A DNA stretch of 64,000 nucleotides. Origin: Cycas panzhihuaensis. Its lineage: Eukaryota; Plantae; Cycadophyta. The translations under genes were made by a program, and so were the position numbers. The stretch spans positions 80,855,741 through 80,919,740 of the forward strand of contig CM041465.1 in the NCBI GenBank assembly GCA_023213395.1, written 5' to 3'. A model generated the notes under the pieces. It saw nothing but the letters and a program-made list of their open reading frames with translations. It was not told the DNA's origin and made no database searches. Positions 4,077 to 30,845 of this stretch are shown piece after piece (within the stretch, counting starts at the first letter, position 1; every line of letters begins with the position of its first letter).

Positions 4077-4580
4077 TGTTATATACCTACTCCATAACTT
4101 GAAGAAATCACTAAATTAATATAAAGGCACAACAAGCTTTTAAGAGTTTTAACAATTGAAAGACCAATAAATTAATTGATAAATAAGTGATGTTCAATAT
4201 TACATTTAAGGGCATATTTATATATACATAATAGGTTTTTTTTTATAAATAATTGCAACTATTCAAGGGTGCCTATTCACTTAATGATCGATTGATTAGT
4301 TTTAAGGAGGTTTATAACAGTTTATAACAATTCCTCCCCCTTAGGATGTTTTACCCATAAAACATAGCTAAATAATTACAATCCTTAAAATGAATATTTT
4401 CATTCATTGAGGTTACATCCAATAGAATATTACTTAGATGTTGTAAGCTTTTATTAAAAGATGATTATGCTTGAAGACCTTGGCAATATTTTTCATGTTT
4501 TTAGGATATTTTACATATTTTATCTCCTTTAGTTGTCAATTTATTTCTACTTAGTACATTAGAAATTGAGATTTTGTATT

Positions 4581-6300
4581 TTATAAATGTTTTCCACTAT
4601 CTTCATGTGAAATTACTTTGGTTTTTCTTGAGTTTTTTCTTGAAAACATGATGTTTTTTCCTTCTTTCCTTAATCTTATGAATAACTCATCTAGATTCAA
4701 TTTAAAAGTCCCAAGTGTACTAAGCCATTGGCTTCCCAACATAATACCTACACCTCCCACATCAATGACATAAAAGTCTTCTATAATGTTGATATTACTT
4801 ACTGTGAGACAAAGGTATTTCATCATGCCTTAGTTTGATATTTCTTATCTTCCTCTAATACTTACCTAGAAATGAGGAGTCCTTAATGGAAATAATATCA
4901 GTTACTTAGCATAGTTCTTGTCATTAAAATTATAAGTACTATCTAAAACTACTAAGATTATAATAACTTGATTTTTGATAGATCCTTATAGTTTTAGTGT
5001 ATTTAGTTGAGTGAAACTACTCATAGATGAGATTAGCATATTTAGATTGATAACCTCAAGATTACAATAACTTCCTTGATATTCATAGTTATGATAATCT
5101 CCTTGATTATGTTATAATCCTCACTCATATTCCTCTTCATCAATATTATCATTAGCCAATAATCTAATTGTATATAGCTGGTTCATTTGGCATTTGTGCC
5201 TAGGACCCCACTTCTTTTTGCATCTAAAACATAGGTCTTCTTTCCTTAATGTTTCTTATTATGTTCTTATCTTTAGAATGATTAGTTTAACAGATTGATT
5301 TAAATTGATTGATAATGTTTTATGTTGAGTATTTGGAAATAGATTATACTCAATAGATGAAGGAATATAGGGGTTTGTATTAGTTTTGCATAATACATTA
5401 AGCTTATCTTCATGTATTCTGGCTAATTATATTGCTTTGTTAAGATCTTTTAGTTCTTGGACCTTAACATTGGCTTAGATTTTCATTATTAGGCCATCGA
5501 TGTATGGTTAAATAAGACTATGGGTTAAGATGTCTTATAATATATAACTTAACTTAGTGAAAGATGTATATATTCTTCTATAGATCTAGTTTGTTTTAAC
5601 TTCTATAAATCACAATGGTAATTATAGTTGGTTACTATTTCAAATTGTTTAATGAATAAATGGATAACTTATTTATAGGCTGGTAATTAATTCTCAAATA
5701 TAGCATATTCTAGACATTGCCACCATTTGTATATTATTTTATCCATGTGTAAGATAACCAAAGTAACTTGTTCTGCTAGCTCAATTTCCATTAGACGAAA
5801 ATAATTTTCCATATGCTAAATCCACGCTCCTAGCTCATGTGATTTTTGCTCAATATTAAAATGTTATCTCATAAAATTTTCTAACTTTTTCTTTTTCTAT
5901 GACTATATAGTTTGTAAGCAATTAAAATATGCTTGAAAACCCACTATCTTCTATTCTTTAAGAGTTAGATTTTAGTAGTCATTAAGATATTTCTTAATAG
6001 ATTCATTTTCAAGATTAACTTGAGTTGTTTGAGGATCTAAATGATTCTTTCTAGATTGGTCTCTAGCATATGATTGGCAACTAATTCCTTTATCTTTGGA
6101 GTCAGGAATCATCATGTCTTCTTTTTTATTATTTGTCATGATTGTCATTTTTCCTAAAATTTGATGTAGGATATGGTTTAAGAGAGCATTCAATATTTGA
6201 ATAACTTTATGGACTACTTATATAACGGGTTCATCTATATCCTTTTGAATGGAATTATCAACCATTTCTTTCATACTCATTACTTTATAATGGTGCATGT
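4581..6300 (-). pseudogene. Element B gag and aspartic protease remnants; RT, RNase H and most of integrase absent
   Basis: ORF 4581-4826 (VIDVGGVGIMLGSQWLSTLG). CFRCKKKWVLGHKC at ~5190-5235. Sequence parallels A at 20120-21760. The protease region runs almost directly into the PPT. Confidence 0.75.
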
Positions 6301-6905
6301 ATGATTCCATTGATCTCCTTTTGTAACTATACATTAATTCATCAAATTTATATTAATAGAATGAAGAATATTGTCACGATGCTTGTTTAAGGGATGATAG
6401 ATATCTAACGAATATGTGTATGCAAAACACAATTATAGATATGAGAGAATCTAAGATACTCTAATTGTGAGGGCAAGACTTGATTATAATGGTTGATTTA
6501 ATATTATATCTTTGCATGTCAATAATATGAATTTCCTTTTTCCTAATTATACATAAGTTGTGACTCACCTATTCGCAATGAATATTTCTTATAAAGTATT
6601 AAATAATATAGGATTCTAGTTTGTAGGAAGCTAAAGATAGGTTAACGAATGAAGGGATGAAGGTGATAGAATAAAGGACGAATGAGTAAGACTAACGATC
6701 GATAAATTAATCTAGCAAATGTAATGTATGTTAAGAAGTTTATCTTTGTTATAAAGGAGCATATAAGGTGATTCAAAAAAGTGTATATAAAGTAGCACAA
6801 TTATTTAACCCTTTAAAAAAGATAAAAGAATATCATAATCAAATTATATAATATCTTACTTGGATGGCTCCTAATAATATTACATATAATATAAGGTGAT
6901 GTACA

Positions 6906-7060
6906 GGGTATATTAAAGAAACAATTATATGTTTATAATCATTAATGATTTGAGTATAATGCCCTCTTCCATGATTACAAGTATTACTTTGCTCAATAAA
7001 CTCAATGTCAAAGTCTTGACAAAATTAGGATAATGTAGTTTGACTATTAGTTTTGATGAG
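6906..7060 (+). pseudogene. Captured DUF674-family gene fragment in the leader of B, antisense to the element, ending at a GT donor
   Basis: With one frameshift and one stop it reads GYIKETI/MFIIINDLSIMPSSMITSITLLNKLNVKVLTKLG*CSLTISFDE, then GAG|GTTAGT at 7060/7061. This fits the recalled DUF674 motif GFVKG..TFMVTDDL.V.P.S.ISSI.LLNKLNV.D...LEE..V.IG.EE. Confidence 0.75.
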
Positions 7061-8787
7061 GTTAGTAAATTGAATGGTTGATATTGTTGAAATATTTAAT
7101 AGAGATCATTCAATATTAAGAATAATGAAGTAAGTATTATGAAAATAATAAAAATATTATTAACTCGTAATCAATGTATATGCATCATAATGACACTACA
7201 ATAATAACTCAACAACGATCTCTGTCTTGACTCAATGTGTACTACTCTACCTCATTCACTTATTTATACATCATAAGTGAGAGTGTGTAGGATAAAGTGA
7301 GTTATATGTAGGACTATTAACCTCTAATATAATTAATGATATAACACATATTTATTAACTAATGACATATTGACCACCTACTTGCATATATGTGCATTAC
7401 AATGATATTATAATATTAACCCTCTAAAGTCTAATGCCTTCCCTTAATATATATTTGGGAAATCCTTAAATTTTCAATACCTTATTCTTAGAATTGTCTT
7501 AAAGATAATGTTTTCAGTTTCAACTTCATTCTTGTAATGGCGTTCTTGTAGTAGTCCTTGAGAGTATATTGGCTGTAATACCCAATTACATTAACCTTAT
7601 GTAAACTCTCTCTATTTCTTATATTTTATATTAGAGTTGTGGGCCACATTGATATGTGTTCCAAATCTAAGTAGACCAATGGGGTTCTCTCACTAGTGGT
7701 GAGCTAGTATTATAAGTATGTACTCTTCATTGTTCATAATTGAGTTTTGGTCAATTCTCCATACATTGTACTTATTGTTGTATATACTTTATTTTTTATC
7801 TCTTACTAACCATTAAGGTTTTATGTGATTATTGCATTCCTAATTCTAACATGGTATCAGAGCCCAAACCAATCCTTGTGGACTCTATTGCAAACCCTAG
7901 TACATGTTATCCTTGATTTTGAGCTTTCAAGCCTTATAAATTTTTTGATATGCCTGCTTGGTGATTTTGTCAAGTTAAAGATCATTTCAAGTTACATCTT
8001 ATACATATTTTGTTATGGGATTGTTATCAAATTTTGAAGGGTCTTTTTAATGTTGATGAGAGGCTATTTCCAAGCCCATTTTTGAAGTTTTTTAAAGTTG
8101 TTTAAAGCCTATTAAAGATGCTCAAGTGGACATCTTCCACGCATGTGGCGCCACAATAATATTACATGCAAGTGAAAATCCATGAAAGCTCATTCTAATT
8201 ACTGGAAGACCACCTCTGTTGCACGTTAGTAGAAAAAAATCTAACCAGGATCATTGACAACAGTTGAGAGAGTCCTTCTTGGCTAGGAGCAACTCTATTT
8301 CAAAATTTTTTTGTAGATCTACACGTGGATAAAGGTCTTATATTATTTCTATTGATATGTACTTTCTTTATGTTAAAAATATTCAAAAAAATTCTATATT
8401 CTGACCTATGTTCCTATGTATTTTTTTCAAAAAAAAAAAAAGGATCTCCCAAATCTATTTGTTGGTGAGCTTCCATTACCAGATCCATGGAGAGAAAGAT
8501 TACAGACGAAAAGATTCTCTTTAAGATTCAAGATCACTATTCTACTGTGCTTGCTGATTGGGATGTATAAAAGCTATCTATTTGGGTTTCCTGCAATCAT
8601 AACATGTTCTCTAGAGGCTAACGGTTATTCCACAGTTGTATCATTTTCATAATGAGACCTGTAACTATGCCAAAAGAATCTTAACAATATTATCTGCAAT
8701 ATGAGCATCATGTGAACTATTGCATGGAAATTTTAATTGATTACAATAAGAAGACAATATACATATGAAAGCTTATATTCCATCAAG

Positions 8788-9179
8788 GGATGAGAGCACG
8801 TGAGGTGCTACTAAAGAGCAAGAACCTTGGTCTTTCAAAGGATGAAATGCAGAAACTGTTTCCTATTGTGGTTGCAAGCTCTTTGGATTCAGGAGCCTTT
8901 GATGGTGTCTTGGAGCTTCTTGTTTGATTTGGAAGGAGCCTTCTTGAAGCAATAATGATGATGATTCTAGAGGTATGGCAGAATGACAAAACAATGAATC
9001 TTGATTGATGAGCTTTGTATGAATATTTCTCGGCATTGATGGAGCCATGGGATGGACCCGCTCTTGTATCATTCACTGATGGTTGTTATCTTGGAGCAAC
9101 GTTAGACCGTAATGGACTTTGTCCTTGCCATTTTTATGTTACACATAGTGGGCGAGTTATCATGGCAAGTGAAGTAGGA
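8788..9179 (+). pseudogene. GLT1: Captured fragment of NADH-dependent glutamate synthase (GOGAT), amidotransferase domain
   Basis: One frame with three stops: [127 protein letters not shown]. This closely matches plant NADH-GOGAT. Confidence 0.93.
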
Positions 9180-9329
9180 ACTCCTAGTTACATTGGTCCC
9201 CATTTGATTTTGTTCGGTGGTGCCACTGCCCTTGAAGGGAATTCTATAGCTTTTGGTCTATTGTCATTCGTGAGAATGCATGCATCAGGTTGGCGAGCTT
9301 TTCCCATTGGAGATCCACCATCTCCTCGA
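9177..9329 (+). pseudogene. BSL1: Captured N-terminal kelch-region fragment of a BSU1-like (BSL/PPKL) Ser/Thr phosphatase
   Basis: Reads [23 protein letters not shown]...(frameshift)NACIRLA, then an internal deletion, then PIGDPPSPR. The recalled BSL1 sequence is [25 protein letters not shown]...SAGIRLAG...LTP.GEPPSPRAAH. Confidence 0.85.
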
Positions 9330-10575
9330 TCCATGGCATCCAATCTCACTCACAACATCCTTATCTTCAGCCTGCACATAATGGTTCCCTGCGCAATAAT
9401 GGCACCTCTCCTCTGTTCAAAGACCTACATCCAATGGCAACTCAAATCAATGGCAGCTTTGCACCACTGGTGATTTGTGATATCCACAGCCATGCTCCCA
9501 TAACATCAATGGCCTCCTACATAAATCGATGGTGGTACCTCTAGAATGGAGAATCGATGGTGACAATCCCTGTAACTTGCTTCTCAAGCTCTACAACTTA
9601 ATTCTCATGGCGACATCCCTCCCTCACTCAGAAAATTTATTGGAGCATATTTCCCAGCTATCAGGAATGGACATGGGCGACTCGACTTAGGTAAATATAG
9701 GTATGCTTCTATCCTCATTCCTGTTGGCTTCAAATTGCTATGAGGTTGTTGATAGAGGCATAATGCACATTGATTAGTTGATTGCGTGATTATTATGCAT
9801 TATTTGCCTATGCATGTTGCACCTTAATACCTTAGCCTATGATGACTTGGGATACACATCTCATAGCATTCTATAACCCTCCACCATGTCTCTACCATGT
9901 CTCCAAGCACTCTTGGCTCCTGTAGTCTATCTTTTATCGTTCTTGGTATGACATAATCCTTAGCACCTCACCTAGGCCCTGTTATCACCTTCATTTTGCT
10001 ACTTGTCTCTTTTTGTAGTCTTTTCATCACACATAGTGGTCCTCCTAGGTCCCAAGACTCTCTCAGCATATTGCCCTCTTATGGTCTAAGACCCCCTTTC
10101 TGGAAGCCTCTTAGGGTCTCCCCTCTCTATTTTTCATTAGTTTTGGTTGCACTATTGTAAACTCTGTGGTACCATTGTAAACTCTGTGGTATCATGAAAT
10201 TTGTCATGATGTGACTGTTCAAAAGCCTTCTTTTATTTGGCCACGGCTAATTTTGCATTAAATACAAAATTTCCACATGGTGTTGGGTTGTTTCCTACCT
10301 AGGGCAAATCTTAATCGCTCGTTGAGTTAGGTTTGGGTTTAAAAACCCAAAATTTCCCTCATTTTGTCTCTTCTTCCTCCTATTCTTAAGAGAAAGTTTT
10401 AAAACAAGCTTCTAACTTGTTGTACTTACCTTCTACTCTTGTTATCATCTCCTCTAGGGAAGAAATGTGAGTTGTAGGTCTTCAACAACACCTCTTGAGA
10501 TAGATCTCCATCACCAGTGTCTCACTAAGGCTAAAGCACTAATTTGTTGAAAGATATACTCTTCCTTTGTACCAT

Positions 10576-12699
10576 TGTAGGGATCTTTCAATAGTTTTCC
10601 AAAGGGAGCCTCCTCTCCCTCCAGTTTTCATGGTAGATCTGCCTTAGGTCTACCCCTTACCAGGTACTTACAAGCTTGCATATGCTCTTTTCTTTCACAA
10701 CATAAGCATTTTGTTTGCTTGCCTTTCCTGTTTATGTGTGAAATCCTCCTTCATTCTTCTATTTTGGGAGGCAGACCCTCCCTTCTGTTGGTTTGTCCCT
10801 CTTCTCTTTGAAGTTTTCCTTGGGTCCATCCAAGGAGGTAGAAGGAAAAATGACTAGTGGGGAGAGAAAGGAGATCAAGGCAGGGTTTTGCACCCTTATG
10901 CCTTCTCCTTAAGGGTAGACCCCTACTCTCCATCTCTTTTTCCTTCCCCATACCTCTCTTGTTCACCCAGAAAATTTTAGGGCTAGGAAACTTTGCAAGT
11001 TGCAGTGTTAGTGGCCCCTTGCTATGCCTGCAACCAGCCACCAGAAAACCCCATAAAACCTAGTCATCAACACCCCTTTTGTGTTCCTTAGCTTTGGTTT
11101 TACTTTTACAAAATCCTGCAAAATTTACACTTTACAACTTTTATAGCTTTTGCAACTTTATTGCAACACCTATGTCAACATGCAAAACTTATTGTTCTTT
11201 TTCTACCATTAGATGATTTAGGCCTTTATTGGTCAGCCGCTTGAGTACTTGGAGAAACAGAGACGTTTCACTGTGGAGGGTCATCCATTCCAAGGCTACC
11301 ATCTTTCTTCCTTTCACCCCCCTTATCTGCATTATTGGTTTGTTGTGCATTCATGGTAAAACAAACTAGCATTGCATATTTGATCATTTAAAGATATTCA
11401 TTGAGGTTATTACTTTGCTCCTTTCTTTCGAAGAAAAGCATATACACATATTTTGTCCATACTTGCTCCCACGTGCATCTAGTGTCCCTTGGGATAGGGC
11501 AAACAGTTTGTTGTGTAGGTTTCATATGATTCGAAGTAAGCAAAGACCTTCATTATAGGTATGCCTACCTTTCCCTTATTATTATTGTTATTCTTTGAAA
11601 TTCCAAATATAAGTATTCCTTTCTTGCCTTTTGCTTCTTCTACATTTGGGTATTGGGGAAGGTAAGAAAGCCCGTACTGATGTTCTTTTCGCCATACCAT
11701 CCATGACAAGGCATACCAAGGAAGTAGGCATGGATCATGAAGGAAGCAAGGAGGCCTCCACATTGACCGTCTGGTTTCTAGGCATGCTACTTCTATCTCA
11801 TCCTTTCACTTTTCACCTTCATCCCTCATTTTTTTTTACTCCAAAAAAAAAAAAGGAGGATTAAAGGAAAAGGTAGTTCGCACTACATTGCTTGTCATTT
11901 ATCTTGTTTTTCCACATAAGGAAAAGTCAATTACTTTGCATAAGTAGGTGTTGCTCCCTATTAGCCACGTCTCTACTTTCTCTCCCTTCCACTCAAACCC
12001 TTGCTTCCACTAGGATTTAGGTAGGATAGGTTGTTCATCCTTTTACCTGTACCTTTCTTTCTCTTGCATGCTATTAGGTCAACTCACATTAGTGATTACA
12101 TTCTTTTCCTTAGTTGCTTGATTATCTTTTCTTTTCTATGCTTATGAAAGATAAAGAGAGGGAGGTTAATACTTAAGAAAAGAAAGAGTAAGTGTGTTGT
12201 TCATTCATTTTCCTTTCTACTTAGAAACAAAATACAAATAACAATAACTTGTACCCCCATATTGTCTCACCACATAACAAAAAACAAAGAAACAACATAT
12301 TTTGCTTTGTCTCCTACACCTAACTCCTGTTTCAGGTGTAGGTGCCTTGAGGGTACCACCCCTTAAGGTCCTCTTTCCCTCCTTTAGTAAAGCCTCTCTT
12401 TGCTTTACTTTTCGCCCAAAGTTGGCCTTTTTTGCCCAACTTCCTCTTTGTCCCTCACATTGCTAGCTGCCTACGACTTGGGTATGAGTCTTTCCTTCTT
12501 GGTTAGGACTTATTCCACCTATTCCCTCTTCACGGGAAGGGGCACGTCTTACCTTATGCTCCTTCCTTAGCCACCCAGGATAGGAGGGTCTTTTTTGAGG
12601 TTACTCGGCAAACTGAGGAAGTCCCTCTCTTGCCCAAGCACGAATCGAGGAGGTGCTTACCCTAGAAGGGAGTTTGTGCACCATTTACGGGTCCTCAAA
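10576..12699. mobile_element. Putative ~2.1 kb solo LTR (gypsy, long-LTR type) inserted in F
   Basis: GC-richer non-coding block. Ends TGTAGGGATC...GGTCCTCAAA could be decayed TGTGGGGACC...GGTCCCCACA. The flanks ACCAT/CTTAT match only partly. Confidence 0.35.
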
Positions 12700-14647
12700 C
12701 TTATGTTTCGATGCATGAATGCCCTTTTTGGGTGATCATTTCCCTTACCCTCGTAGATCCTTTAGCCATGAAGTTGTTAGTTGCATTGGATTGATCTCTT
12801 CAAATTTGGTGACCCCCAAACGTATGATTCTAGAACCCTAACAAATTTAGCGTTATATGATATTTTTTAGACATATATATATTTTTAATCATGGCATGGA
12901 CATGATATTATGTAAAAAGGATTACATTATTTGGTGTATATTATTATGGCAGACTTCAAATTTCATTGGAAAGGGTGTATTGTTTTCAATTTGAAAAATT
13001 GAATTAAGTTATATTGTATATTATTTCAAGTCTATCCAAATTTCTTAAATCGGCCAAAGATCAGGTCCTATGGAGGCTTAATATGACCAGCAACTAGCTC
13101 GTAGAAGGGTCTAGTCCCCATTTTTATTATTTTCTAAAGTATTGGTCACTTTTTTGGACATATCTTGAGATTAGGAGGTCCTTTTTCAGTCTTGTCTATT
13201 GCATTGGGTCTGTAACAGAGAGACCTTTAATTTTGAAGGTCCTTTGACATATTTTGGAGTTATTTTCATGGAGATATTTTAGTTTAAAGTCATAAGATCT
13301 TATCTTTCTTCATTTTTTCTTAGCTTCTACAGGCACATATTGTATTTTCGAGGCTTCTTGATGTAATGTACTCCAAATGAGAGGGATGACATGTACTATG
13401 GTCTTATTTTTTGGCTCTTGAAGAACCCATTGTGATTATCTTATACTTCATTTATGAGAGAGAGTCATATATGCTACACTCAAGTCATATATTATTTTTT
13501 TAGTCATGTAAAAACTTTTAATGTTAGTTAGTTTGCCTATGGTGGTAAGTTGTTAGCCTAATGATATATCTTTTAGCCCATGTGGCATATTTAAGGCCAT
13601 AGTGCTATTATATTTCTGGTCATTAGATGCCGAAGAAGTGTTAGTCCTATTGAGTGAGAGATAGGACACACTTTTAAAAGCTACTCTTACTTGCTATGTG
13701 CCATGTGCCATGTGCCTTCTATATTTTTCTGCTTGCACTCCTATATGAGCAAGGGGTGCGAAATTATTCAACTACTCTTGCCAGCTCCTGATTGATCCAT
13801 GTATACAAAGGGAGTTTCTACCCAACTGGTGGTTGCAACAACTGATGACCCATGCATTCCAGTAGATGGACTCCACTTCATATGGACTTCGGTAGCTTTT
13901 TTATTTTGTGTAACAGTATTTGTGATCCAGTAGACTCTTGAAGACTCAATCTTATTATTAATGTGACAACATTTATGTGATTGACTATTATAGGGGGAAA
14001 TGTTAGGTGTAATACCCAATTATATTAACCTTATGTAAACTCTCTCTATTTCTTGTATTTTATATTAGAGTTGTAGGCCACCTTGATATGTGTGCCACCT
14101 TTAAGTAGACTAATGGGCTTCTCTCACTAGTGGTGAGCTTGTATTATAAGTATGTACTCTTCATTATTCATAATTGAGTTTTGGCTAATCCTCCACACAT
14201 TGTGCTTATTGTTGTATGCATTTCATCATTTTGTATTTTATTGTTTAGCTCTTGTTCCCTAATAAAGTTTTATGTGATTATTACATTCCTAATTCTAATA
14301 GAGTAATGGCCCTTAAACTTTGCTTTTTTCATCTTGGAATATAACATTGAGTCATTCATCATACAAAAGTTATAATAGATCATAGTTTGTCCAATTTAAA
14401 CTTAATGTAGATTTGGCAAGTAATCTTATAGATAATCATCAAAAGCATCTTAAAATTTGAAGTGTATATCAAGTATGACTTCAACCATTATTCTAATCAT
14501 CACCTGTTTGCCTTTATTTTCTTCAACATATGAATAATTAGCATCTATTAAACCAATATCAAAATTTAAAGATAAGACATCAAAAGAAGAATTAACATCA
14601 CTTGAAATATTTGAGAAGTGATCATTATCCTATATAAATTCTTCCTT

Positions 14648-15340
14648 TTAACTAGCATATCTAACAATAACTCCTTTATCCTTTACAGTAGAATCTTCAT
14701 TAACTTGTGAACAATTCAAATTTGAATCAATAGTCAAATCAAGAATTAAGTTTATATCAACGAATTTATCTTCAACAAGGCAATTTGATTTTGATTCTTC
14801 CTCCCCTAAAACAATAGGGTCATCTAAAGAAACTTCTATTGTTTGATCACAATCATCAATAGTCAGTTTATGAATTTCAACATGCTCAGTAATGTCATCA
14901 TATTCAACAACATATTCAAGAGTAGTCTCTTTATATTCATTAATATTCCTTATTCCTTCATTAATACCTTGACATATTTTTCTACCTGCATCAATAGTAT
15001 TGTCTTCATCCTCTTTATCTATATTATAACTATTAATGATTTTGTTTACTTTTTCAAGAATCTCTTGGATCTCTTGAGGACTCTTTTCATACACATCATT
15101 GAAAAGATTTCGGGCTTCTTTAGTAGTATCAACATTATAAATTACATAAACGAGAAAATGGTAAGAAGAAGGAAGTTCATCTTTATTTAATGCAACAAGA
15201 ATGACATCAATTATTGTTTTATTCTTCTTCCTAAAATTTTCTTCCCGTTCTACATCAGTCAAGGTATCATATCCATTAGTGATCATTTCTATAACCTTTT
15301 GTATACAAATATGCTTTGCATTTTGATTGCCCAACATCAA
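14648..15340 (-). CDS. Element C gag-like ORF (copia gag N-terminal-like region plus acidic extension), 230 aa open
   Basis: ORF track. VIEMITNGYD...RKKNKTIIDVILVAL...VDTTKEARNLFNDVYE resembles copia gag (W..V..GY...KD.KA...I..AL...TAKEAW..L...Y). It is sense to element C. Confidence 0.55.
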   Translation of the reverse strand: MMLGNQNAKHICIQKVIEMITNGYDTLTDVEREENFRKKNKTIIDVILVALNKDELPSSYHFLVYVIYNVDTTKEARNLFNDVYEKSPQEIQEILEKVNKIINSYNIDKEDEDNTIDAGRKICQGINEGIRNINEYKETTLEYVVEYDDITEHVEIHKLTIDDCDQTIEVSLDDPIVLGEEESKSNCLVEDKFVDINLILDLTIDSNLNCSQVNEDSTVKDKGVIVRYAS

Positions 15341-16314
15341 TAATTTATTTTAGTGTACTTAGGTAAAGTAAAAGGAAAGTTTGTTAACCAATATTGATTC
15401 CTTTCAGGTACAAAAATGATGATGTCGTCTAACTCCATGATGTAAGGATAAGATGATCAAAAATATATTACACAAAATTTATGCATCCACTTCAAATTGA
15501 AATAGCTTTATCAAATCAATAGCAAAATAACTTAAAACATGCTCCAAGTTGTAGTACTCTGAATGAGGATTTCGACAAATCAAATAGTTTAAAAAATAGA
15601 TGCTTAGTTAAAGAGATATCATGAAAATTGTGAAGTGACCTCCTTATAAACAAAAATTAAACTAGAATAAACTTTAGCTCCTTTTCTCATATTAGCACCA
15701 GGTCATATTGAAACTACATAGAACTAAGGGCTTAATTGTTAGGGGGCTAATGAACTTCAAAACATATTATAATATGATTTATTATAAATTTGACTTTATA
15801 AAAATAATTAAATATGCCTTATTCTCATTTGGCATTCATAAATTTGAATGAAGTATCCAAAATAGCTTAATATGTAAAAACCTTTGTAAGAGAAGATCAA
15901 GTTATGTCAAAAAATTAAGAGTTGCATAATAACAACCCTATAATGACTGATTTTCATGAAAAATCTAACTAGAATGATAAAATATTCAAACTGTTGGATC
16001 TTTAGAAGATAGACGCCACTCTAAACTTGATGCAATAATATTTATGAATCCAAGATAGAGGTGAGTAAATCAAATGGCGCATTCAAAACCACACAATGCA
16101 AAGCCATACAATAATTCAATATCTAGAGTATAGAATGATGTAATCACTTACTACCAATTGTCATGAAGATGCAATCAATGATAAGGTACTAGGGTGAATC
16201 ATTAGGTAAGGTCATGGCTTAAATATTCTCCTCAGGGTGAACAACAAGTAGGTGATATAACCAAGTGTCTTCCCTTTTATTCCCTCACATAAAATGAGAC
16301 AAAGTATCTTTCTA

Positions 16315-17065
16315 GTAGGTACCATATACAATGTTGTATATATTATTAGTGTCAACAAACTATAGAAAGTAATCTTCTATGATTTCAAGAAGTCCATCTT
16401 GATCTTAATAGGGACATCTACTCTAATATTTAAGGGAATGATGTCTTCATATTGCTTAGTTTACAGAGATGAAAGAAGCTTGTCATTCTAATGCATGTTG
16501 GTCCTGTTGAGGGCTACCACTATAACTATAGTGTTCTTGCAATTTTGGTAGAAAGCTGCCAACTTCCCATAATAGAGGTCTATTTTTATATATGACATGG
16601 CTATGTAACTTTTTAATTTAATTTTATTTTATCTATTATTATTTTCTTTTGGATTCATGGCCATGATTTAGATGATAAATTGTAAGCTTATGGAAGAATC
16701 ATCAATATTGGCATCAAATTTTATAATCTAGATTCTCTACACTAAATACTTTTGAATCTTAGGTTAGAATATTAGGTGAACGACAATACACACAATTGCC
16801 ACAATAATAATAATTGGGAAGAGAAAGTAGAATAACTAGGAGAGGCAGTGACAACTCTTTATCACCTTCAATTATGAGTAATTTTATGCACAGTTGCATT
16901 CTCCTTTCCTAATCACAACTGTAATCATTGTATAATTCACTCAACCACTCCTCTTTAGAGTTTTAACTGGCTATTTATCATTTATTTCCATGGCTAAATA
17001 TGTAACTATATATCCATGGCTGGGCACTTCATATAACTACTTTTTGGGCACCTATGATTAACTAT
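16315..17065 (-). pseudogene. Captured NDR1/HIN1-like (LEA_2 domain, NHL6/NHL13-type) gene in the leader of C
   Basis: Minus-strand translation with stops and shifts: (Q)VPKK(Q)LYEVP ... ENA ... KSCHCLS(W)LFYFLFPIIIIVAIVCIVVHLIF(Q)PKIQKY.VENL.IIKFDANIDDSSISLQFII.IMAMNPK...SYIAMSYIKIDLYYGKLAAFYQNCKNTIVIVVAL...LLSSL...IIPLNIRVDVPIKIKMDFLKS.KITF. The NHL motifs appear in the expected order. Confidence 0.85.
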
Positions 17066-19779
17066 CTTCTTCTATTCCATACACTAGAACAATCATTCTT
17101 TAGGGTTTTATCTCATGAGCTTATGCTTTTATGTAGACATGCAACCATCACTCCTTTATATAGTCATTGATTGCATACATTATATATAGGGTTTTATTTA
17201 TCACATAGTTTAAAATAGAAGAAATAAAAACCAAAGTGAGTTCCCTGGTGATGGCTTTACAATGGCAAATTAACACATTTATAAGCTGAAAAATAGAGCA
17301 TAATCTCATTTGCATCTATGCATGAATATATGTAAGATTTGTTCATGCTAGATTTTCTTCAATGAAAATACTTTTACATAAACTTAATAACTGACTTCGA
17401 ATTTCACTAATCAAATCCTTAATATTCTCCAACACAAACCCTGGAAAGTATTTACAGTTATAAACCTTCACTTTTACCATACAAATAGAATTTAATGACT
17501 GGAAAAATTATATACATTCATCTATCATTATTTTTTAGTTTCACAAATTCTTGCCAACCAAGTTCTTTATAGGGTAAACCCTAGTATATAGCTTTTATTC
17601 ACATAATAAAGTGAAAGAATCATATTACCTAGTAAAAATTCTATCTTGCATCAATGAAGGTCATGGCTTGGCATAACTTGCAATAATCATAGCCTTAAAG
17701 TTTCACCGTCTACAAGTAGAACCATAAACTAGTAATCGACTTTACGGAGCTATCTCCACACTCATCAATAGAATGGTGAACCTGTAAAATGATAATCTTA
17801 ACAAGCAACTTGCTCTGATACTATGTTGAAATATTCAATAGAGATCATTTAATATCAAGAACAATGAAATAAATATCATGAACATAATAGAAATATCATT
17901 AACTCATAATCAATATGTCTACATCATAATGACACCACAATAACAACTTAACAATGATCTCTATCTTGACTCAATGTGTACTACTCTATCTCATTCACTT
18001 ATTTATACATCATAAATAAGAGTATCTAGGATGGGGTGAGTTATATGTAGGACTATTAACCTCTAACACAACTAATGATGTAATACCTATTTATTGACTA
18101 ATAACATATTTACCACCTACTTACACAAATGTGTATTATAATAATGTTATAATATTAACCCTCAGAAGTCTAACATTTATAATTGAATCTAGTTTTTTTC
18201 TTTATGATGATGTGCTTACAATAATACATAGTAAATAAAGAAATGGATGATGGTGAATATCATAATATACCACACCACTGGAAAATATATTAATATGATA
18301 TCAATATATTAATCAAATGATGGTGAATATATTAATACACCACGCGACTATTATTTTAGAAAATGTTTCCAAATAACATGCTAATTTTATTGCAGAAATA
18401 TCTATATAAAATATATATTTGATCACGTAAACATGCTATGTCTAAGACAAGGAGAATGGGCGATGTAACTATGGTGAATATGTAAAGAAGATTTCTATGC
18501 AAAGGTGATTAATGTAGTCAGCCACAAAGAGAAAATCAACTCGATGGAGGTTTTTTGATGGTCTCACTAGGTCCTGAGTCTAATATTTCTACTATGAAAT
18601 TTTAAATCAAGGAATTTAAGATTGATTAGTTGGGCACCACTGGTAAATGTTGAATATATATTTGTGTAGAGCTTGATGATGTTAGAATAGAGCTAGGCTA
18701 TGTGAAAGGACTTTGGTTATGATATATCACCACTTCCTCTATACTCTCTAAGAGATTGCTCTATATATATTTTTTCTTTTTTCTTTTTGTAATTAATTTA
18801 TATGCTTACATATGAATGGTGATAAGAAGAAAAGGAACATATGCTTAAACTTACAAAAATTATTAGAGACTAGGGAGAAAATGTTATAAACATATTATGA
18901 TGTAGATAACAATGATAAAGTGATGATTCAGATGAGGAGATGAGGTGCCACAATTAATTAGAATGTAATGTATGATAAATAGTTGAGATAGATTGCCTCA
19001 CTATTTCTATGTTTGTTTAAAGAGATAATAATATTTATAAATTAAAACTCCAAATGTTTAATCTTATAAGAATATAGGTTTGAGTGAGAGGATAATCAAA
19101 TATGAAGTTTACACGAGTAATGCAAGTTATAGTGGTAGTTATTTGACTAGATCAAGAGTACAACTCATATATGCTTATCTGCAAAAGTGCCCATAACTAG
19201 TGTATGTCTAATTGTAAAAAGTGCTTAGTTAATAGTCTAAGTTTTTGCTAATTTATTAAATGTATAAGAGATATCTTAATGAATATATAGGATATTAAGT
19301 GAAGGGAATCAAAAATCAAGTAATGGTACTGGCTAGTAATGAAGATATTGGCTAAAAGTTAAAATGAAAAGGATGATGTGTTTTCTCTTTCCTAGACTTA
19401 GTATTATACTTGCAAACAAGGGCTAATAATTAAGATTCTTATAAACACCAAAACATAGAAGTAAATGGATTAAATAAAGATTATCGATGCTAACTAAGCT
19501 AAATTAAACTCACTTTGATACCACTTGTTAAGGACCTACTCCATAATTTGAAGAATTCTCTAGATTAATATGAGGGCACAGGAAGATTTTAAGAGCAATC
19601 AAAAGACTAATAAATTGATTGATAAATAAGTGACATTCAATATTACATTTGAGGGTATATTTATATATACATAATAGGCCTTTTTCATAAGTAGTTTCAA
19701 TTATTTAAGGATGTTTGTTCACTTAATGATTGATTGGTTAGTTTTAAGTAAGTTCATAACATAGCCCTACCTTATTTTT

Positions 19780-20115
19780 TATTAGAGTGGCATTATATCC
19801 ACTTAATCAACTAATGTAAATGAGGTGATATATTATACAAATATTATGATATATTATTGTGATGTAATATTGGGTCGACGAATGTAATCTCTAATCTATT
19901 TATTTGAGGCACTTATGGGTCTATAAATAGGGATCCAATGTCTACTGTAATATTATGGGAGATGTGTGAAAATATAACATTATATTTCTGTGGTGGGGTT
20001 TTCTCAAAAGGGTTTCTTACATTAAATCTATTATCCCTGTGTGCTTGTTCATTTGATGTCTATTATGTACATAAATGATTATGTGTCTTATCTATATATT
20101 TGGTGTTTTCTAATA
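19780..20115 (+). repeat. D1: isolated LTR of the D family, followed by a possible PBS remnant, inserted in A
   Basis: Colinear with 32268-32596 and 43127-43456. Followed by tggtgtc (cf. TGGTATC). No TSD, so it may be a truncated 5' end rather than a true solo LTR. Confidence 0.8.
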
Positions 20116-20119
20116 TGGT

Positions 20120-21760
20120 GTCTCATAAATAATTTATCTAAGTTTATTTTGAAGGAATCGAGTGTTATGAGCTACTAACTACCAAGAATGATATCTACTC
20201 TTCCCACATCAAGCATGTAAAAAATTTCTTTGATAGTAATATCACCGGCTGTGAGTTTAAGGTTTCCCATCATACCTTATCATAAGATAACTTATTAGCC
20301 TCTAACACTTACTTGAAAAGTGGATGTTCTTTATGGAAATAACCTTAAGTATAGATGAGAGATCCTATCCATAAAATTATGAGTGCTTCTTGTATCTATC
20401 AAGATTATAATGACTTAATTTTGTATGAATTCTTATAGTTTCAATGTATCTGATCTTGTGATACCACTCATATCTAAAAATGATAATTTTATAATGTCAT
20501 GTTGGTGATTGTAGTAGTCCTCTTATAATTTATAATAATCTTCTTATGCTGTTTTTAGGCTTCCTTCCTCCTCATATCCTTCATCCTCTACTATGGGTGA
20601 TAATTTAATTATATATAATTAGTTTTTCTAACATTTGTGATCCAGTACCCACTTCTTGGTATATCTAAGATATAATTTTTTTTTTTTATTAAATCTTATT
20701 AGTTTTTCATTGTTCTTTGAAAAACAAGCCTAATTGGTTGGTTGGACCTAGCTAGTAAGGAACTAGGTCAAATAATTGGTAATGGATTAGGCTAGGTAAA
20801 TGGGGGAATATAGGGTCTTATTTTAGATTTTTGAAGCTCGTTGATCTTATCTTCTTATGTCCTAACAAGTCATATTGATTTATTAATATCATTCAATTCT
20901 TGGGTCTTCACATTAAATTGAATTTCTTTTATCAGACCACCAATGTATAATTGGATGAGTCTATCAGTTGTAATATCTTCTAGTATATAGCTCAATTTGG
21001 TGAATGTTGTGTTGTATTATTCTACAGTTCTTGTTTACCTTAATTTTTGTAATTCATAATAATAATCACGATTGGCTACAACTTCAAATCTTTTAATGAA
21101 TAAATGGAGAAACTCTTTCCATGTTGGTAATTAGTTTTAGAATGTGGTATGCTCCAAACTATGCTACCATTCATATGCAATTCCATCCATGTGTAACATT
21201 GCATAACGACTTGCCTAGTTGTCTCAATTTTTGCCAAGGAAAATAATTTTTCATTTGTTGTATCCATGCTCTTAGTTTATGTGTCTTCTACTCAATGTTA
21301 ATGTATTTCATCACATTTTTTTCTAGCTTTTTCTTTCTTTTTTATAATTATATAGATTGTAAATAGTTAAAATATGCTTGGAATTCAATCACTTTTTATT
21401 CTTTAGGTGTTAGGTTTTGGTAGTTATTTAGATATTTTTCTAATAGGCTCATTGGTGAGATTTAATTATGTTGTTTTAGGTCTAGAATTATCTCCTATAA
21501 GTTGTGTTCTAACATACGATTTATGACTAATCCCTTCATCTTTCAAATCTAATATAATTACTTCATCTTTTCCTTATGTTGCCATAATAGTTAAATTTTT
21601 AAGATTTGATGTAAAGTGTGGTTTAAAAGTATATTCAATTTTTGTACTACCCCATGAAGTACTGGTGTAATAGGTTTAATTATGTCTTTTTGACTAAATT
21701 TCTAGCCACTTTATTAATGTTCATTATATTTGTAATGGTATATATATAATTCCATAGCTT
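20120..21760 (-). pseudogene. Element A protease and gag remnants
   Basis: Homologous to B 4670-6300 (FYMLDVGRVDIILGS, YTKKWVLDHKC, WIQQMKNYFSL). Continues the frame broken by the B insertion. Confidence 0.75.
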
Positions 21761-21818
21761 GTACCCCATAACTATGCATTAATAGATTTAATTTATAGCC
21801 TTCTAATTAGTTTGTTAT

Positions 21819-24800
21819 TGAAGGAAGGATGGATCTAGGGAATAAATCACTCACATGCACACAATGGCAATGGAGAATGAAAAGAGATGAAACAAGATAT
21901 GAGAGCAAGCTTGGAGGTGAGAATGAATAATAACTCCCTCCTTGAGATTTTACCTTTTATTATTGAGGGTGAGCATCAGGGTTAGGATTTCTTACCTAAT
22001 GACATGAATATGAAATTACATCTAAATACATATAAAGTGCATTTCATTAAGAGACTAATGCTAACAATATATCCTAAGGTTATATAATTAATTTACATAA
22101 ATGACCTTGATACATTAACCTCTTTCAATCTCCCCCTTAATGCTGGAAGATTATTTTTGAGAAAATCTATTCTATGAGGTCTTCGTTTGAGCCTCATTAT
22201 TACATTGAAATTCTAAATGACACTTTTGTGGGAAAACCCTCACGGGGAATAAAAACCCACGAACTTTCTAAGATCTATAACCCCTTTTATAAATTAAAAT
22301 GGCTATGGTGGCTCTTTGATATAGCCTGATAGCCAAGTAGCTTAAATGTACAACTTAATCTTCTAAGTCTCTATATATCGTTTGGTCATCCCCTATGACC
22401 TTTTGGGTTTTCACAGGTTTTAATTTTCTAAAACTAGTACAACCCTTATCCTTTCATGCCCACATGGGATTTTCACAAAGAGGATAGAGCAAAGACTTAC
22501 TCTTATTCTTCCATGCCCACAAGGGGTTTTCACGAAGAGAATAGAGTATGATGATCCTATTGTCATCTTCTTTGATTAGTCAAAGATGGAAGCCCTAAGG
22601 CCAAGCTACTTTTGGAACTATTCAAACTTCACCTTTTGCAGCTGTTTGGTGAATATATCATCCACTTGATCTACTATAGGGCAGTATTCTAGTTGAATTA
22701 TGTCGTCATAAATAAATTCTCTAATTCTGTGGAGTTTCGTACTTATGTCTTTGGTACAATAAAAAAATACAAGAATTTTTGGCATGCAGATTGTTGATTG
22801 ATTATCCACATGAAGACTTGTAGGACTTGTTTGGGTGATATTTAATATTTTCAATAATTTTCTCAGCCATATCACCTCTTTACTAGTCTCAAAAGTAGTA
22901 ATGTATTCAGCTTCAGCAGTTGAATCTACAACTATCTTCTGCCATCTGGATCTCCATGATATTGGTGTTGTTCCAAGAAACATTACATATCCAGACGTAG
23001 ATCTTCCTATATATTTATCTCCTGTAAATTTTGAGTCTGTGTATACAGAAAGCTTGAAGTCTAAATTAGGTTCATACAATAGACCATATTTGCTGGTCAT
23101 CTTAAGGTATCTCAACACTCGTAATGCTACCTGCCAATGATTCTGCTTAGGATTTATCATGTAACGAGTAAGAATAACGATAGAGTATGTAATATCTGGT
23201 CTTGTATTGGTAGTATAGATGAGACTACCTATAAGTTTCCTGTAGAGTGTTACGTCTGCCTTCCTAGTGTCACCTTTAGCTAAGAGTTTGGTATTAAGAT
23301 CCATAGATAACATCACTGGTTGAGCATCTTCTAACTGAAACTTGGTTAGAAGATCTTTCATGTATTTTTCTTGGGAGAGAAAAAAATTTATATTTTTTTA
23401 TGTTACTTTAATTCCTAACTAATATTTTATCAAACTAAGGTCAAACAATTCAAACGTTTTGCTAAGGTCCTTTTTCAACTGGCTTATTGCCTGTTTACTA
23501 TTGCCTATTACAAGCATGTCATCACAAAGATTATAAGATATGTGACTTTATCCTTATGATACTTGATGAATAATGTTGCATCAATATCTTGGTTGTGACA
23601 AACCTTGTATCCAATTTGTCTCATTCTTTTAGACAACTTGGCAAACCAAGCACGAGGGCCTTATTTAAGGTTGTACAAGGACTTTCTGGGCCTTTAAACC
23701 TTATGCTCTTGATCTTTGATCTTATATGCTTCTGACTGATACATGTAAATTTTTTCTTCAAGATCTCCATTGAGAAAAGTGGTCTTAATATCAAGTTGGT
23801 GGATTTTCCAATCGTGTTGAGCATCCAAGGCCACAAGAGTTCTAATTGTAGGCCACTTGGTTGTAGGTGCAAAGACTTCAATGTAGTCAATGCCTTCCCT
23901 TTGTGTAAATCCTTTAGCTACTAACCCCACCTTATGTTTTTCAAGGGTGCCATCTGATCTATATTTATTTTTGAACTACCTTTCTACCAAGTGGTAGATC
24001 AACAATCTCCCATGTACCATTCTTGATAAGAGATTGGTACTCTTTGTTCATGGGATTTCTCCAAGCTGTATGCTTTACAACTTCTTGGTATGTTAGGGGC
24101 TCTTCATTAAGAGTAAGGTGCATTTCTAATGGTTCAAGCTCAGTATATAATGATTCCTATATCTTTGCTCTATGGGCACTTTGAGTGCCAGTTTTGCCCA
24201 CCTCATCTAGTCGTATATCCTTAGTGAGTTGGCGAGTTACTCAAGATCCTCAAGCTAGGAATGAAGTCCTCTTTTTCTTAACTTCTTGGTTCTCATCTTA
24301 TTCATTGAAATGATTATTTTGTGAGGAGGATATTGATGCGCCTAAGGAAGATGGTCCTTCTACTACTGTTTTGCCTTTGTTAACTAAAGGTAGAGAGGAT
24401 GGTTCTTCTATAATGTCTTTGCCTTTATTAACGCTGTTATCTTCAAAAGATGGTGCTGGATATGCACTCATCAGTTCAAAGTCACAACTTATATCCTCCA
24501 AGGCTCTATTGTTAACTTCCAATATTTGGAAAAATTTATGTCTGCCCCCCCCCCACCCCCCCCCTCCCCAAATTTTAGAATTTGAACATCATACTTGATA
24601 ACATGATTATAGTGGCGTGAGGGTACTTGGAGTCCAGTTTAAGTAATTGATCCTTTGTATCTGCAAAAATGACATCTTTGGTAATGATAACTTTTTATTG
24701 TGAAGGTGTAAAGACCTTATACCCTTTCTTATCCATAGGCTATCTAACAAAGATGCCTTTAAGTGCCCTTGGTTGGAGTTTATTTCGATCTGCATCCAGA

Positions 24801-29291: not shown

Positions 29292-30607
29292 GTTATCTTG
29301 TCTAAGGGGTACTAATTATCACTAGGTCACTATGTCTCCCCAATATATTAGTCAATATATATTTCATTTGATTATTACTTCACCTCCCTTTTTGTATCTT
29401 TACCTACATAGATAATTTCCTCTTATAATTATAAATCATTGAAAGAAAGTAAACCAACCAAATGATGAAAGACGAGCTTCTTATTTCCCTTAGCCTTCAA
29501 AATGATATTTGATAATAAATCTAATTTTAATTAAATTATTTGTATGTTATTTATGACAAACCCTTTATGCTTAGGCATTCTTATATCAGATCGTCACATA
29601 GAGAGGTATGGTCAAATAAGACAAATTATAATTTCCTCTTATTGTGTTAAATATTGAACTTATAGTTGAACTGAGTATAATAGTTATCGTGTGAATATAA
29701 AACCGCTTTGAGATGGTCACCTTTTATACTTCTACACTATGAGGAATATATGGTCTACTTCTTATATAATGACTATGTAGTAAATTAAAATCATACCATG
29801 ATGAAATTATCTGATAGTATGATGAAATAATGTTTTAATATACCACTTAGCATATATAATTCTCTATGGATTATGTCTTTGCTAAGCAATAATTGCTAAT
29901 GTTAATTCTCTGGTCTTTTATTGTGGTTGGTATGATGTTATAAGAGCTCAATAGGTGTATGTGATAGCTGCAAGGGTATAAGAGATCGAAAAATAATAAG
30001 CCACACTTCCTAGTGCCTTGGCTTAGTGTCAATACATCAAACTATAGATTATTATTATGCCTATATTACCACATGGATGCTACTTGATAAAAAGTCACAT
30101 GTTTGTACCCTATTTAGTGTGCCAAATGGCTTGTTTTCCTATAGACTATGACAAATGACTTATTTTTGCTATCTATGGATATAAGATACTAACGTAAACT
30201 TCATTATCTATGGATATCAACTTAAATTTAATTGATCTTTAATAATGTTTACCTCAACTAGTCTTTACATTAAACTTGCATGTGGAAAATAATCACATGA
30301 AGATAATATTATCCACGATCTCCTACGAATACCATAGATACTTGTCATAGGATATCCAAAGATAATGTTAGCAAATATTTTTTTCATAATGTAGGAAAGT
30401 TGATTAATAATCTAATGGACTATTGCTATCTTTATATGAGACAATTTGATAGATAACTTAATGCAAGTAAAAGATGACTAGAAAAAGGGATTACCTAATG
30501 GGAGAATGTAAGGATGCTATATGCAGTGCAAGGAAGAATGAATAATAGCCTCAAATATAGGCTAGCTAATTATTATTTCATTGCCAAGGGATTTCTTTGA
30601 TTCCACT

Positions 30608-30845
30608 TATCACAAACCTTTGTCCATAACTTGGTAGTTATAGGAGACCATGAAGATGATTTAAGGATTCAATATTTGAAAATAAATGTTTGATTAATTA
30701 ATGATAAATAATATTTAATGTTTATAAGGGTTACATATTTATAAAAAAGACGTAATACATTTTGGTAAACAAATGCAACCATTCGAAAGTGCATTTTCAT
30801 AATAATTGGATTAGTTAACTAACTATTGTAAAGAGGTTTGTAACA
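30608..30845 (-). repeat. 5' LTR of element A
   Basis: Homologous to 806-1068, adjacent to a decayed PBS, with an imperfect 12-bp terminal inverted repeat. Confidence 0.85.

What the first reader, a model, noticed from the sequence alone, without database searches (positions are those of the whole stretch)
4077..19761. Three nested pol-less LTR elements each carry different host-gene cargo: a possible general gene-capture system
Seen: B (gypsy-type, DUF674 exon), C (copia-like, NHL gene plus exon-like pieces) and F (GOGAT + BSL) all keep LTR, PBS and PPT, lack most or all of pol, and hold the cargo downstream of the PBS. No cargo was recognised in the complete elements E, H or I. Inference: non-autonomous LTR families from both superfamilies act here as Pack-type vehicles that amplify host fragments. 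They could be a source of retrogenes or of siRNAs against nitrogen-assimilation, brassinosteroid-signalling and defence genes.
Basis: partly seen in the sequence, partly recalled or inferred. Interest (0 to 1): 0.85.

Follow-up and report, generated by a model that had tools for sequence, protein, structure and literature searches.

The report
Nested LTR elements, one with captured genes
Three old, pol-less plant LTR retrotransposons sit one inside another, and the innermost carries an intron-free piece of a glutamate synthase (NADH-GOGAT) gene fused to a Kelch-repeat piece, a kind of gene capture already known from maize Bs1, rice and sorghum.

Summary
Three nested LTR pairs lie at 4077-19761, each with a tRNA-iMet-type PBS and a PPT. 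LTR divergence follows the nesting order (K2P: B 0.182, C 0.156, F 0.127). No Pfam pol or gag domain was found in the 15.7 kb.

The cargo claims are uneven:
- **F, GOGAT:** solid. 8787-9182 is 393 bp in one frame with three stops. It matches GATase_2 positions 245-372 without a gap, so it is intron-free.
- **F, BSL:** weak. The piece fused in frame is a Kelch-like fragment (Kelch_3 E 0.05). Its best PDB hit is BSU1, at E 0.59.
- **B, DUF674:** real but only 32 residues, and antisense to the element.
- **C, NHL:** not confirmed. It has 13 in-frame stops, and its motif score is reached in 93 of 200 shuffles.

F has a perfect 5-bp TSD (GAGTA), so it is one integration event. The best reading is a Bs1-like capture of host mRNA pieces by reverse-transcriptase template switching. 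The "gypsy" and "copia" labels found no support. Two neighbouring pol-less units show no cargo.

Unchecked first-stage notes report similar captures elsewhere in this genome. This is a new member of a known kind, of modest interest.

The parts
4077..4319 (-). Element B, 3' LTR in element orientation (TG..CA)
   Evidence: Pairs with 19526-19761 at 84% identity, K2P 0.182.
4331..4342 (-). B polypurine tract (AAGGGGGAGGAA on the minus strand). A 10-nt tandem copy of the LTR end separates it from the LTR by 11 nt.
   Evidence: Read.
4674..6352 (-). B internal backbone shared with the neighbouring unit (20121-21797, 66% over 1.7 kb). It looks gag- and protease-like by eye only.
   Evidence: Relaxed blastn. 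No Pfam or homologue support.
6917..7030 (+). DUF674-like fragment, antisense to B, in the 2-kb stretch between B's PBS and the shared backbone
   Evidence: Pfam DUF674, E 0.0012, 18.2 bits (cut-off 24.4), profile positions 401-432 of 445.
7086..7436 (-). Element C, 3' LTR in element orientation
   Evidence: Pairs with 17824-18175 at 86% identity, K2P 0.156.
7437..7445 (-). C polypurine tract (AAGGGAAGG on the minus strand)
   Evidence: Read.
7562..7566 (.). F target-site duplication, left copy (GAGTA)
   Evidence: Identical to 14301-14305.
7567..7851 (+). Element F, 5' LTR
   Evidence: Pairs with 14001-14300 at 88% identity, K2P 0.127.
7852..7863 (+). F primer-binding site TGGTATCAGAGC
   Evidence: Read. 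It directly follows the LTR's terminal CA.
8412..8444 (+). Left copy of a direct repeat: T-run, C, A13, GGA
   Evidence: The window holds only four A or T runs of 10 or more.
8787..9182 (+). NADH-GOGAT fragment: 132 codons in one frame, three stops, no intron, sense to F
   Evidence: GATase_2 profile positions 245-286, 289-311 and 316-372 in consecutive pieces. 960 library hits at E 1e-10 or better. The closest named hits are NADH-type.
9183..9470 (+). Kelch-repeat fragment, probably BSU1/BSL type, fused in frame to the GOGAT piece inside a 153-codon open frame
   Evidence: Kelch_3 E 0.05. Best PDB hit is BSU1 9tp5_A, E 0.59. The first 24 residues hit a Kelch protein best.
9471..12830 (.). Rest of the G+C-richer block of F (37-49% G+C, pyrimidine-rich on the plus strand). 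Its origin was not identified.
   Evidence: Composition. No Pfam hit in 27-153 aa segments.
11826..11857 (+). Right copy of the direct repeat: T-run, CC, A12, GGA
13788..14000 (+). F 3' internal end, including the PPT AGGGGGAAA at 13992-14000. It is conserved with a related element at 63529-63736.
14001..14300 (+). Element F, 3' LTR
14301..14305 (.). F target-site duplication, right copy (GAGTA)
14651..15349 (-). Open 233-codon frame inside C, acidic, with no relatives found
   Evidence: No Pfam family, no homologue, no atlas lead.
16300..16991 (-). Claimed NHL (NDR1/HIN1-like) relic, not confirmed
   Evidence: One frame with 13 stops. Published motifs score 43, a value reached in 93 of 200 shuffles. 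No Pfam hit.
17812..17823 (-). C primer-binding site (TAGTATCAGAGC on the minus strand)
17824..18175 (-). Element C, 5' LTR in element orientation
19512..19523 (-). B primer-binding site (TGGTATCAAAGT on the minus strand, 10/12)
19526..19761 (-). Element B, 5' LTR in element orientation

Best explanation
The stretch is a nest of three old, non-autonomous LTR retrotransposons. B integrated first, C then landed in B's leader, and F landed near C's 3' end.

F is one intact integration event. Between its PBS and PPT it carries, in sense orientation, a 393-bp intron-free piece of an NADH-GOGAT coding sequence. This piece is joined directly and in frame to a Kelch-repeat coding piece, probably of the BSU1/BSL phosphatase family.

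Inferred mechanism: host mRNAs were packaged together with F-family RNA in a helper element's particle. Reverse transcriptase then jumped between templates during minus-strand synthesis. This gave a chimeric cDNA that kept the LTRs, PBS and PPT and so could integrate, as proposed for maize Bs1.

The cargo is now a dead pseudogene. B's 32-residue DUF674 scrap is a much weaker case and C's NHL-like stretch is unconfirmed, so they do not by themselves show a general system.
For: - LTR pairs, PBS, PPT and orientation.
- F has a perfect 5-bp TSD, GAGTA, so it is one integrase event and not a recombinant.
- K2P falls from the outer to the inner element: 0.182, 0.156, 0.127.
- No pol or gag domain in 119 segments, while control elements in the same window give them.
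- The GOGAT piece covers GATase_2 positions 245-372 with no interruption in the DNA.
- A Kingdonia GOGAT-like prediction, P0061, has a 34-residue insert exactly inside this stretch. That fits an intron site which F's copy lacks.
- The coding sequences of two unrelated genes abut within one 153-codon open frame.
- The G+C-richer block of F begins at the start of the GOGAT piece.
- Capture by template switching or transduction in LTR elements is documented (PMC13317346, PMC2774510, PMC3726574).
Against: - No second copy of F could be examined, so 'carried in' as opposed to 'inserted later' is not settled.
- The parent genes of this genome were not available. Exon borders, microhomology at the junction and the age of the cargo are therefore inferred.
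- A 17-nt direct repeat (C, A12-13, GGA) lies at 8428-8444 and 11842-11857, on either side of the cargo. It could be the mark of a separate insertion.
- The BSL label rests on weak scores.
- About 3.3 kb of the G+C-richer block is unidentified.
- DUF674 is antisense to B, which simple template switching does not predict.
Confidence: 0.55

Rival explanations
1. The GOGAT-Kelch chimera is a processed, chimeric retrocopy made by LINE machinery. It inserted into a resident or ancestral F element and has its own target duplication and poly(A).
For: Two of the only four A or T runs of 10 or more in the 64-kb window lie in F. They are on the same strand, and both are preceded by a T-run plus C and followed by GGA (8412-8444 and 11826-11857). 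They bracket 3.4 kb that contains the cargo.
Against: - The G+C-rich, pyrimidine-rich composition runs unbroken across the right repeat to about 12830, so that repeat is not a compositional border.
- The left repeat lies 345 bp upstream of the first recognisable host sequence.
- There is no A-rich polyadenylation signal before the right A-run.
- The A-run is no longer than the repeat itself.
Confidence: 0.2
2. One reading: non-autonomous LTR families of both superfamilies act as Pack-type vehicles that regularly pick up host fragments and amplify them.
For: - F carries host coding sequence.
- B and its neighbour share a 1.7-kb backbone but have unrelated 2-3 kb stretches between the PBS and that backbone. 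This fits a variable 'slot'.
- Unchecked first-stage notes list other cargo-bearing LTR elements in this genome.
Against: - Only one of the three cargoes is solid.
- No superfamily assignment is supported.
- Two neighbouring pol-less units have no recognisable cargo.
- No amplification was seen. No other note in about 850 scanned windows mentions GOGAT, BSL or DUF674 cargo.
- F's cargo is RNA-derived, unlike the DNA-level capture of Pack-MULE or Pack-CACTA elements.
Confidence: 0.15
3. The host-like pieces entered at the DNA level, as filler DNA during double-strand-break repair or by ectopic conversion inside an already resident element.
For: DUF674 is short and antisense, and it lies 55 bp from the C insertion site. 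Filler DNA of this size is common in plants (general knowledge).
Against: The GOGAT piece lacks introns and abuts another coding sequence in frame. A DNA-level source would be expected to bring intron or intergenic sequence.
Confidence: 0.1

Closest known systems
Maize Bs1 LTR retroelement (Jin & Bennetzen 1994; Elrouby & Bureau 2001, 2010; summarised in PMC13317346)
   Same: Both are pol-poor LTR elements that carry pieces of more than one host gene fused into a hybrid reading frame between the LTRs, and the capture is thought to be RNA-mediated.
   Different: Bs1's chimeric ORF is transcribed and translated, and Bs1 exists in a few copies. F's frame has stops. Its copy number and expression are unknown, and its host genes differ (NADH-GOGAT and a Kelch piece).
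Gene-fragment-bearing LTR retrotransposons of maize, rice and sorghum (PMC2774510; PMC3726574)
   Same: Gene fragments sit inside structurally intact LTR elements. In maize, the superfamily 'unknown' (RLX) holds the largest share: 221 of 425 elements in Table 1 of PMC2774510. B, C and F are likewise unclassifiable and pol-less.
   Different: The maize survey found no element with pieces of more than one nuclear gene. F appears to hold two.
LARD and TR-GAG-type non-autonomous LTR retrotransposons (general knowledge)
   Same: They have LTRs, a PBS and a PPT with a long internal region that lacks RT and integrase. They depend on a helper element.
   Different: These classes are defined by a conserved non-coding or gag-only interior, not by host cargo. 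No family consensus was available for comparison.
Pack-MULE and Pack-CACTA transduplication (PMC13317346)
   Same: A non-autonomous mobile element encloses host gene fragments, sometimes from several genes.
   Different: These are DNA transposons that capture genomic DNA with its introns. F's piece is intron-free and lies in a retroelement. Amplification, which defines Pack elements, was not shown here.

Membership tests
LTR retrotransposon (structural definition) | Two direct LTRs ending in TG..CA | tested here: met
   Three pairs at 84-88% identity. The termini are TG..CA, apart from transition changes in the older copies.
LTR retrotransposon (structural definition) | A tRNA-complementary PBS after the 5' LTR and a PPT before the 3' LTR | tested here: met
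   F 12/12, C 11/12 and B 10/12 to TGGTATCAGAGC. Purine tracts lie at 13992-14000, 7437-7445 and 4331-4342.
LTR retrotransposon (structural definition) | A 4-6 bp target-site duplication | tested here: inconclusive
   F: perfect, GAGTA / GAGTA. B: TAGTT / TAGCC, two C/T differences. C: GATAT / TTTAT, 3 of 5.
Non-autonomous LTR element (LARD / TR-GAG type) | No reverse transcriptase, RNase H or integrase between the LTRs | tested here: met
   Of 119 segments of 40 aa or more, only GATase_2 was found. Controls in the window are positive.
Ty3/gypsy (claimed for B) and Ty1/copia (claimed for C) | Superfamily-specific gag or pol domains, or their order | tested here: not met
   No Pfam hit and no homologue. 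A protease-like motif in 4584-4829 was seen by eye only.
Bs1-like gene-transducing LTR retroelement | Host coding sequence between the PBS and PPT | tested here: met
   F: GATase_2 at E 3.6e-24, plus two further collinear pieces.
Bs1-like gene-transducing LTR retroelement | Cargo derived from spliced mRNA (no introns) | tested here: inconclusive
   128 profile positions are contiguous in the DNA. A 34-residue insert in Kingdonia P0061 suggests an intron site inside the stretch. The genome's own GOGAT gene could not be fetched.
Bs1-like gene-transducing LTR retroelement | Pieces of more than one host gene fused | tested here: inconclusive
   The second piece is Kelch-like with weak scores.
Pack-type amplifying vehicle | The same cargo present in several transposed copies | not testable with these tools
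Two metagenome scans for F LTR words gave 0 hits.
LINE-mediated processed pseudogene | A poly(A) tail and a flanking target duplication around the retrocopy | tested here: inconclusive
   A direct repeat of C, A12-13, GGA brackets 3.4 kb, but composition does not change at the right repeat.
NHL (NDR1/HIN1-like) gene, claimed cargo of C | Motifs 1-3 (RPxxP, NPN, FYQG; PMC12223711) in order, and a LEA_2 domain | tested here: inconclusive
   It is the best ordered triple in the window (score 43, at 16787 on the minus strand), but 93 of 200 shuffled windows reach that score. No LEA_2 hit. 13 stops.
DUF674 (PF05056), claimed cargo of B | A match to the family profile above Pfam's gathering score | tested here: not met
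18.2 bits against a cut-off of 24.4.

The most novel reading that the evidence does not exclude
This genome may host lineages of pol-less LTR elements in which the stretch between the PBS and the backbone is a recurrent acquisition slot for host mRNA pieces. That would be a retroelement counterpart of Pack-MULEs working at an unusually high rate. The hints are F's two-gene chimera, the unrelated 2-3 kb leaders of B and its neighbour on a shared backbone, and the many unchecked first-stage notes of cargo-bearing LTR elements elsewhere on this chromosome.
Probability: 0.15. Interest if true: 0.55.

Novelty: new member of a known kind. Interest (0 to 1): 0.3.

Why it matters
Capture of host mRNA pieces by LTR retrotransposons is one documented route to exon shuffling, chimeric genes and possibly siRNA sources. 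This locus adds a clear two-gene example (NADH-GOGAT plus a Kelch piece) in a structurally intact, datable element. It would matter more only if a genome-wide census showed two things: that the same junction was copied to many loci, and that capture is unusually frequent in this genome. As it stands the cargo is a decayed pseudogene with no sign of function.

Tried and rejected
**Unavailable or empty searches**
- Two metagenome scans for words conserved in both F LTRs found nothing. The plant is evidently not in that collection.

**Protein searches**
- The representative search with the 153-aa junction frame listed only GOGAT matches among its best 150, and none of these shows a GOGAT-Kelch chimera.
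- The search for homologous proteins gave nothing for the Kelch part, C's 233-aa frame or B's protease-like frame.
- The protein atlas gave no usable lead.
- PDB searches of the further downstream frames gave only chance hits: a cupin and LDL-receptor repeats.
- Pfam on 9470-12900 in short segments gave nothing.

**Ideas tested and dropped**
- A DUF674 gene near 62784-62942, suggested by a weak blastn hit, was not borne out by translation.
- I first read F as lacking a TSD (TTGGC / GAGTA). I rejected this once the LTR start was moved 7 bp outward, which places the PPT flush with the LTR and gives a perfect GAGTA duplication.
- I considered that 9183-11842 is the whole 3' part of a BSL cDNA ending in the A-run, because the length fits. 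I rejected this because no phosphatase domain is found there.

Broken frames were searched piece by piece.


Full report
**Anatomy**

A self-comparison of the window gives three nested direct-repeat pairs inside 4077-19761. Pairwise alignment fixes their ends:
- B: 4077-4319 and 19526-19761.
- C: 7086-7436 and 17824-18175.
- F: 7567-7851 and 14001-14300.

Read directly from the sequence:
- **F** lies on the plus strand. Its 5' LTR ends in CA and is followed at once by TGGTATCAGAGC (7852-7863), the classic tRNA-iMet-type primer-binding site. Its 3' LTR is preceded at once by AGGGGGAAA (13992-14000).
- **C** lies on the minus strand. Its PBS is TAGTATCAGAGC (reverse complement of 17812-17823) and its purine tract is at 7437-7445.
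- **B** lies on the minus strand. Its PBS is TGGTATCAAAGT (reverse complement of 19512-19523) and its purine tract is at 4331-4342.

F has a perfect 5-bp target duplication: GAGTA at 7562-7566 and at 14301-14305. B has TAGTT / TAGCC, which differ by two C/T changes. C has GATAT / TTTAT.

The Kimura distances between the LTRs are 0.182 for B, 0.156 for C and 0.127 for F. That order is what nesting requires. At commonly used plant rates the distances correspond to roughly 5-13 million years.

**Absence of pol**

I scanned every stop-free segment of 40 residues or more on both strands of 4077-19761 (119 segments) against Pfam. The only family found at E 0.01 or better was GATase_2. As a control, segments from other LTR elements in the same window gave RVT_2, SH3_retrovirus, RT_RNaseH_2, SH3_Tf2-1, Pol_BBD and Retrotran_gag_2. 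The blank is therefore not explained by general decay alone.

- B's protease-like frame (4584-4829, minus strand) has no Pfam hit and no homologue.
- C's open 233-codon frame has no Pfam hit, no homologue and no atlas lead.

**Cargo of F**

From 8787 to 9182, a single frame reads 132 codons of glutamate synthase with three stops and no frameshift. Its three stop-free pieces match GATase_2 profile positions 245-286, 289-311 and 316-372 in order. About 128 profile positions are thus contiguous in the DNA.

A search of 1.84 billion representative proteins gave 960 hits at E 1e-10 or better, all on the GOGAT part. The closest named ones are plant sequences, one of them annotated as NADH-type.

A Kingdonia prediction, P0061, carries a 34-residue insert exactly between 'GPALVS' and 'DGCYL'. 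This is most simply an intron that the prediction read through. F's copy has no such insert. Together with the direct junction to another coding sequence, this points to a spliced-RNA origin. The genome's own GOGAT gene was not available for the decisive comparison.

At 9183 the same open frame (9012-9470, 153 codons) continues into different sequence. Pfam gives Kelch_3 at E 0.05. The best of 177,635 PDB sequences is the Kelch domain of BSU1, at E 0.59. The first 24 residues hit another plant Kelch protein best.

The scores are weak. From my own recollection of BSL sequences the first 25 residues fit well, but that is a lead, not a test. I call this piece Kelch-like, probably of the BSU1/BSL type.

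F's G+C-richer block starts where the GOGAT piece starts and runs to about 12830. The 3.3 kb after the Kelch piece gave no Pfam hit in any frame and remains unidentified.

**Cargo of B and C**

- **DUF674 (B):** 6917-7030 on the plus strand matches DUF674 profile positions 401-432 at E 0.0012 and 18 bits, below the family cut-off. It is the only family hit for a segment that was named in advance, so I accept it as real. It is only 32 residues long and antisense to B.
- **NHL (C):** One minus-strand frame from about 16991 to 16300 contains 13 stops in about 215 codons. That is close to the roughly 8% stop frequency I estimated for this A+T-rich DNA. I scored the three published NHL motifs (PMC12223711) in order and with realistic spacing over all six frames of the window. 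The claimed site is the best in the window (score 43), but 93 of 200 block-shuffled windows reach that score. There is no LEA_2 hit. I treat NHL as unconfirmed.

**Surroundings**

- B shares 1.7 kb at 66% identity with the unit next door (4674-6352 against 20121-21797). The 2-3 kb between the PBS and this backbone are unrelated in the two.
- That neighbour (19776-32599) and the unit sharing its LTR (32264-43456) give no Pfam hit in their own internal DNA. They are therefore pol-less without recognisable cargo, which weakens the proposed link between lacking pol and carrying cargo.
- A diverged relative of F (LTR 64% identical, plus 213 bp of internal 3' end) lies at 63238-63736 on the minus strand and runs off the window. 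F therefore belongs to a family.

**An unexplained feature**

Only four A or T runs of 10 or more occur in the window. Two of them lie in F, on the same strand. Each is preceded by a T-run and C and followed by GGA, at 8412-8444 and 11826-11857. They bracket 3.4 kb that includes the cargo.

This could be the target duplication and tail of a separately inserted, LINE-made chimeric retrocopy. Against it, the composition does not change at the right repeat, and the left repeat lies 345 bp before the first host sequence. I keep it as the main rival, at 0.2.

**Mechanism**

- *Shown:* F is a single integrase-type insertion. It holds sense-oriented, intron-free host coding sequence between the cis elements needed for reverse transcription.
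- *Inferred:* host mRNAs were packaged together with F-family RNA, and reverse transcriptase switched templates. The result was a chimeric cDNA that could still integrate. This is the route proposed for Bs1 and reviewed in PMC13317346.
- *Not shown:* that the cargo was present before this copy integrated, that it was ever amplified, or that it is expressed or yields small RNAs.

**Comparison with what is known**

Gene fragments in LTR retrotransposons are well documented:
- Bs1 in maize carries pieces of three host genes.
- 425 maize elements carry gene fragments from at least 189 captures, most of them in unclassified families (PMC2774510).
- 672 rice and 1,343 sorghum genes have been captured by LTR elements (PMC3726574).

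The maize survey saw no element with pieces of two nuclear genes, so F is a somewhat unusual, Bs1-like case. First-stage notes of this scan describe other cargo-bearing LTR elements elsewhere on the same chromosome. They are unchecked. None mentions GOGAT, BSL or DUF674 outside this window.

**Limits**

- Two metagenome scans for F LTR words were empty.

**Verdict**

This is a new member of a known kind, of modest interest.

Noticed in passing
window 63238-63736 (minus strand): A diverged relative of F: an LTR about 64% identical, plus 213 bp matching F's internal 3' end (13788-14000). The element runs off the window's end, so its interior could not be compared.
   Followed up: partly
window 8412-8444 and 11826-11857: A direct repeat of T-run, C, A12-13, GGA brackets 3.4 kb of F's interior. 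These are two of only four A or T runs of 10 or more in the 64-kb window. It may be a target duplication, a template-switch scar or chance.
   Followed up: partly
window 14651-15349 (minus strand): An open 233-codon acidic frame inside C, in DNA where I estimate about 8% of random codons are stops. No Pfam family, homologue or atlas lead was found. The opposite strand is also unusually open here (14828-15187), so composition may explain it.
   Followed up: partly
window 19776-20118, 32264-32599, 43129-43456: Three LTR copies of one family (77-82% identical) in an LTR-internal-LTR-internal-LTR arrangement that shares the middle LTR. Each internal part holds a nested copia-type element, and its own DNA gives no Pfam hit.
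   Followed up: partly
window 4320-4329: A 10-nt tandem copy of B's LTR end (GTTTATAACA) lies between the LTR and the polypurine tract.
   Followed up: no
window 7079-7085 against 17816-17823: The 7 nt outside C's left LTR (TTGATAT) resemble the PBS-side sequence inside the right LTR (CTGATACTA). This may be a partial PBS copy at the 3' end or chance.
   Followed up: no
proteins P0061, P0040, P0032: Decayed GOGAT fragments are annotated as short hypothetical proteins in other plants. One is a Kingdonia prediction whose N-terminus looks helicase-like by eye and is fused to GOGAT. The others are from Taxus and Nelumbo. GOGAT pieces seem to recur as pseudogene fragments.
   Followed up: no
window 10146-10185: A 20-bp tandem duplication (GTTGCACTATTGTAAACTCT, 85% identical) in the unidentified part of F.
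   Followed up: no
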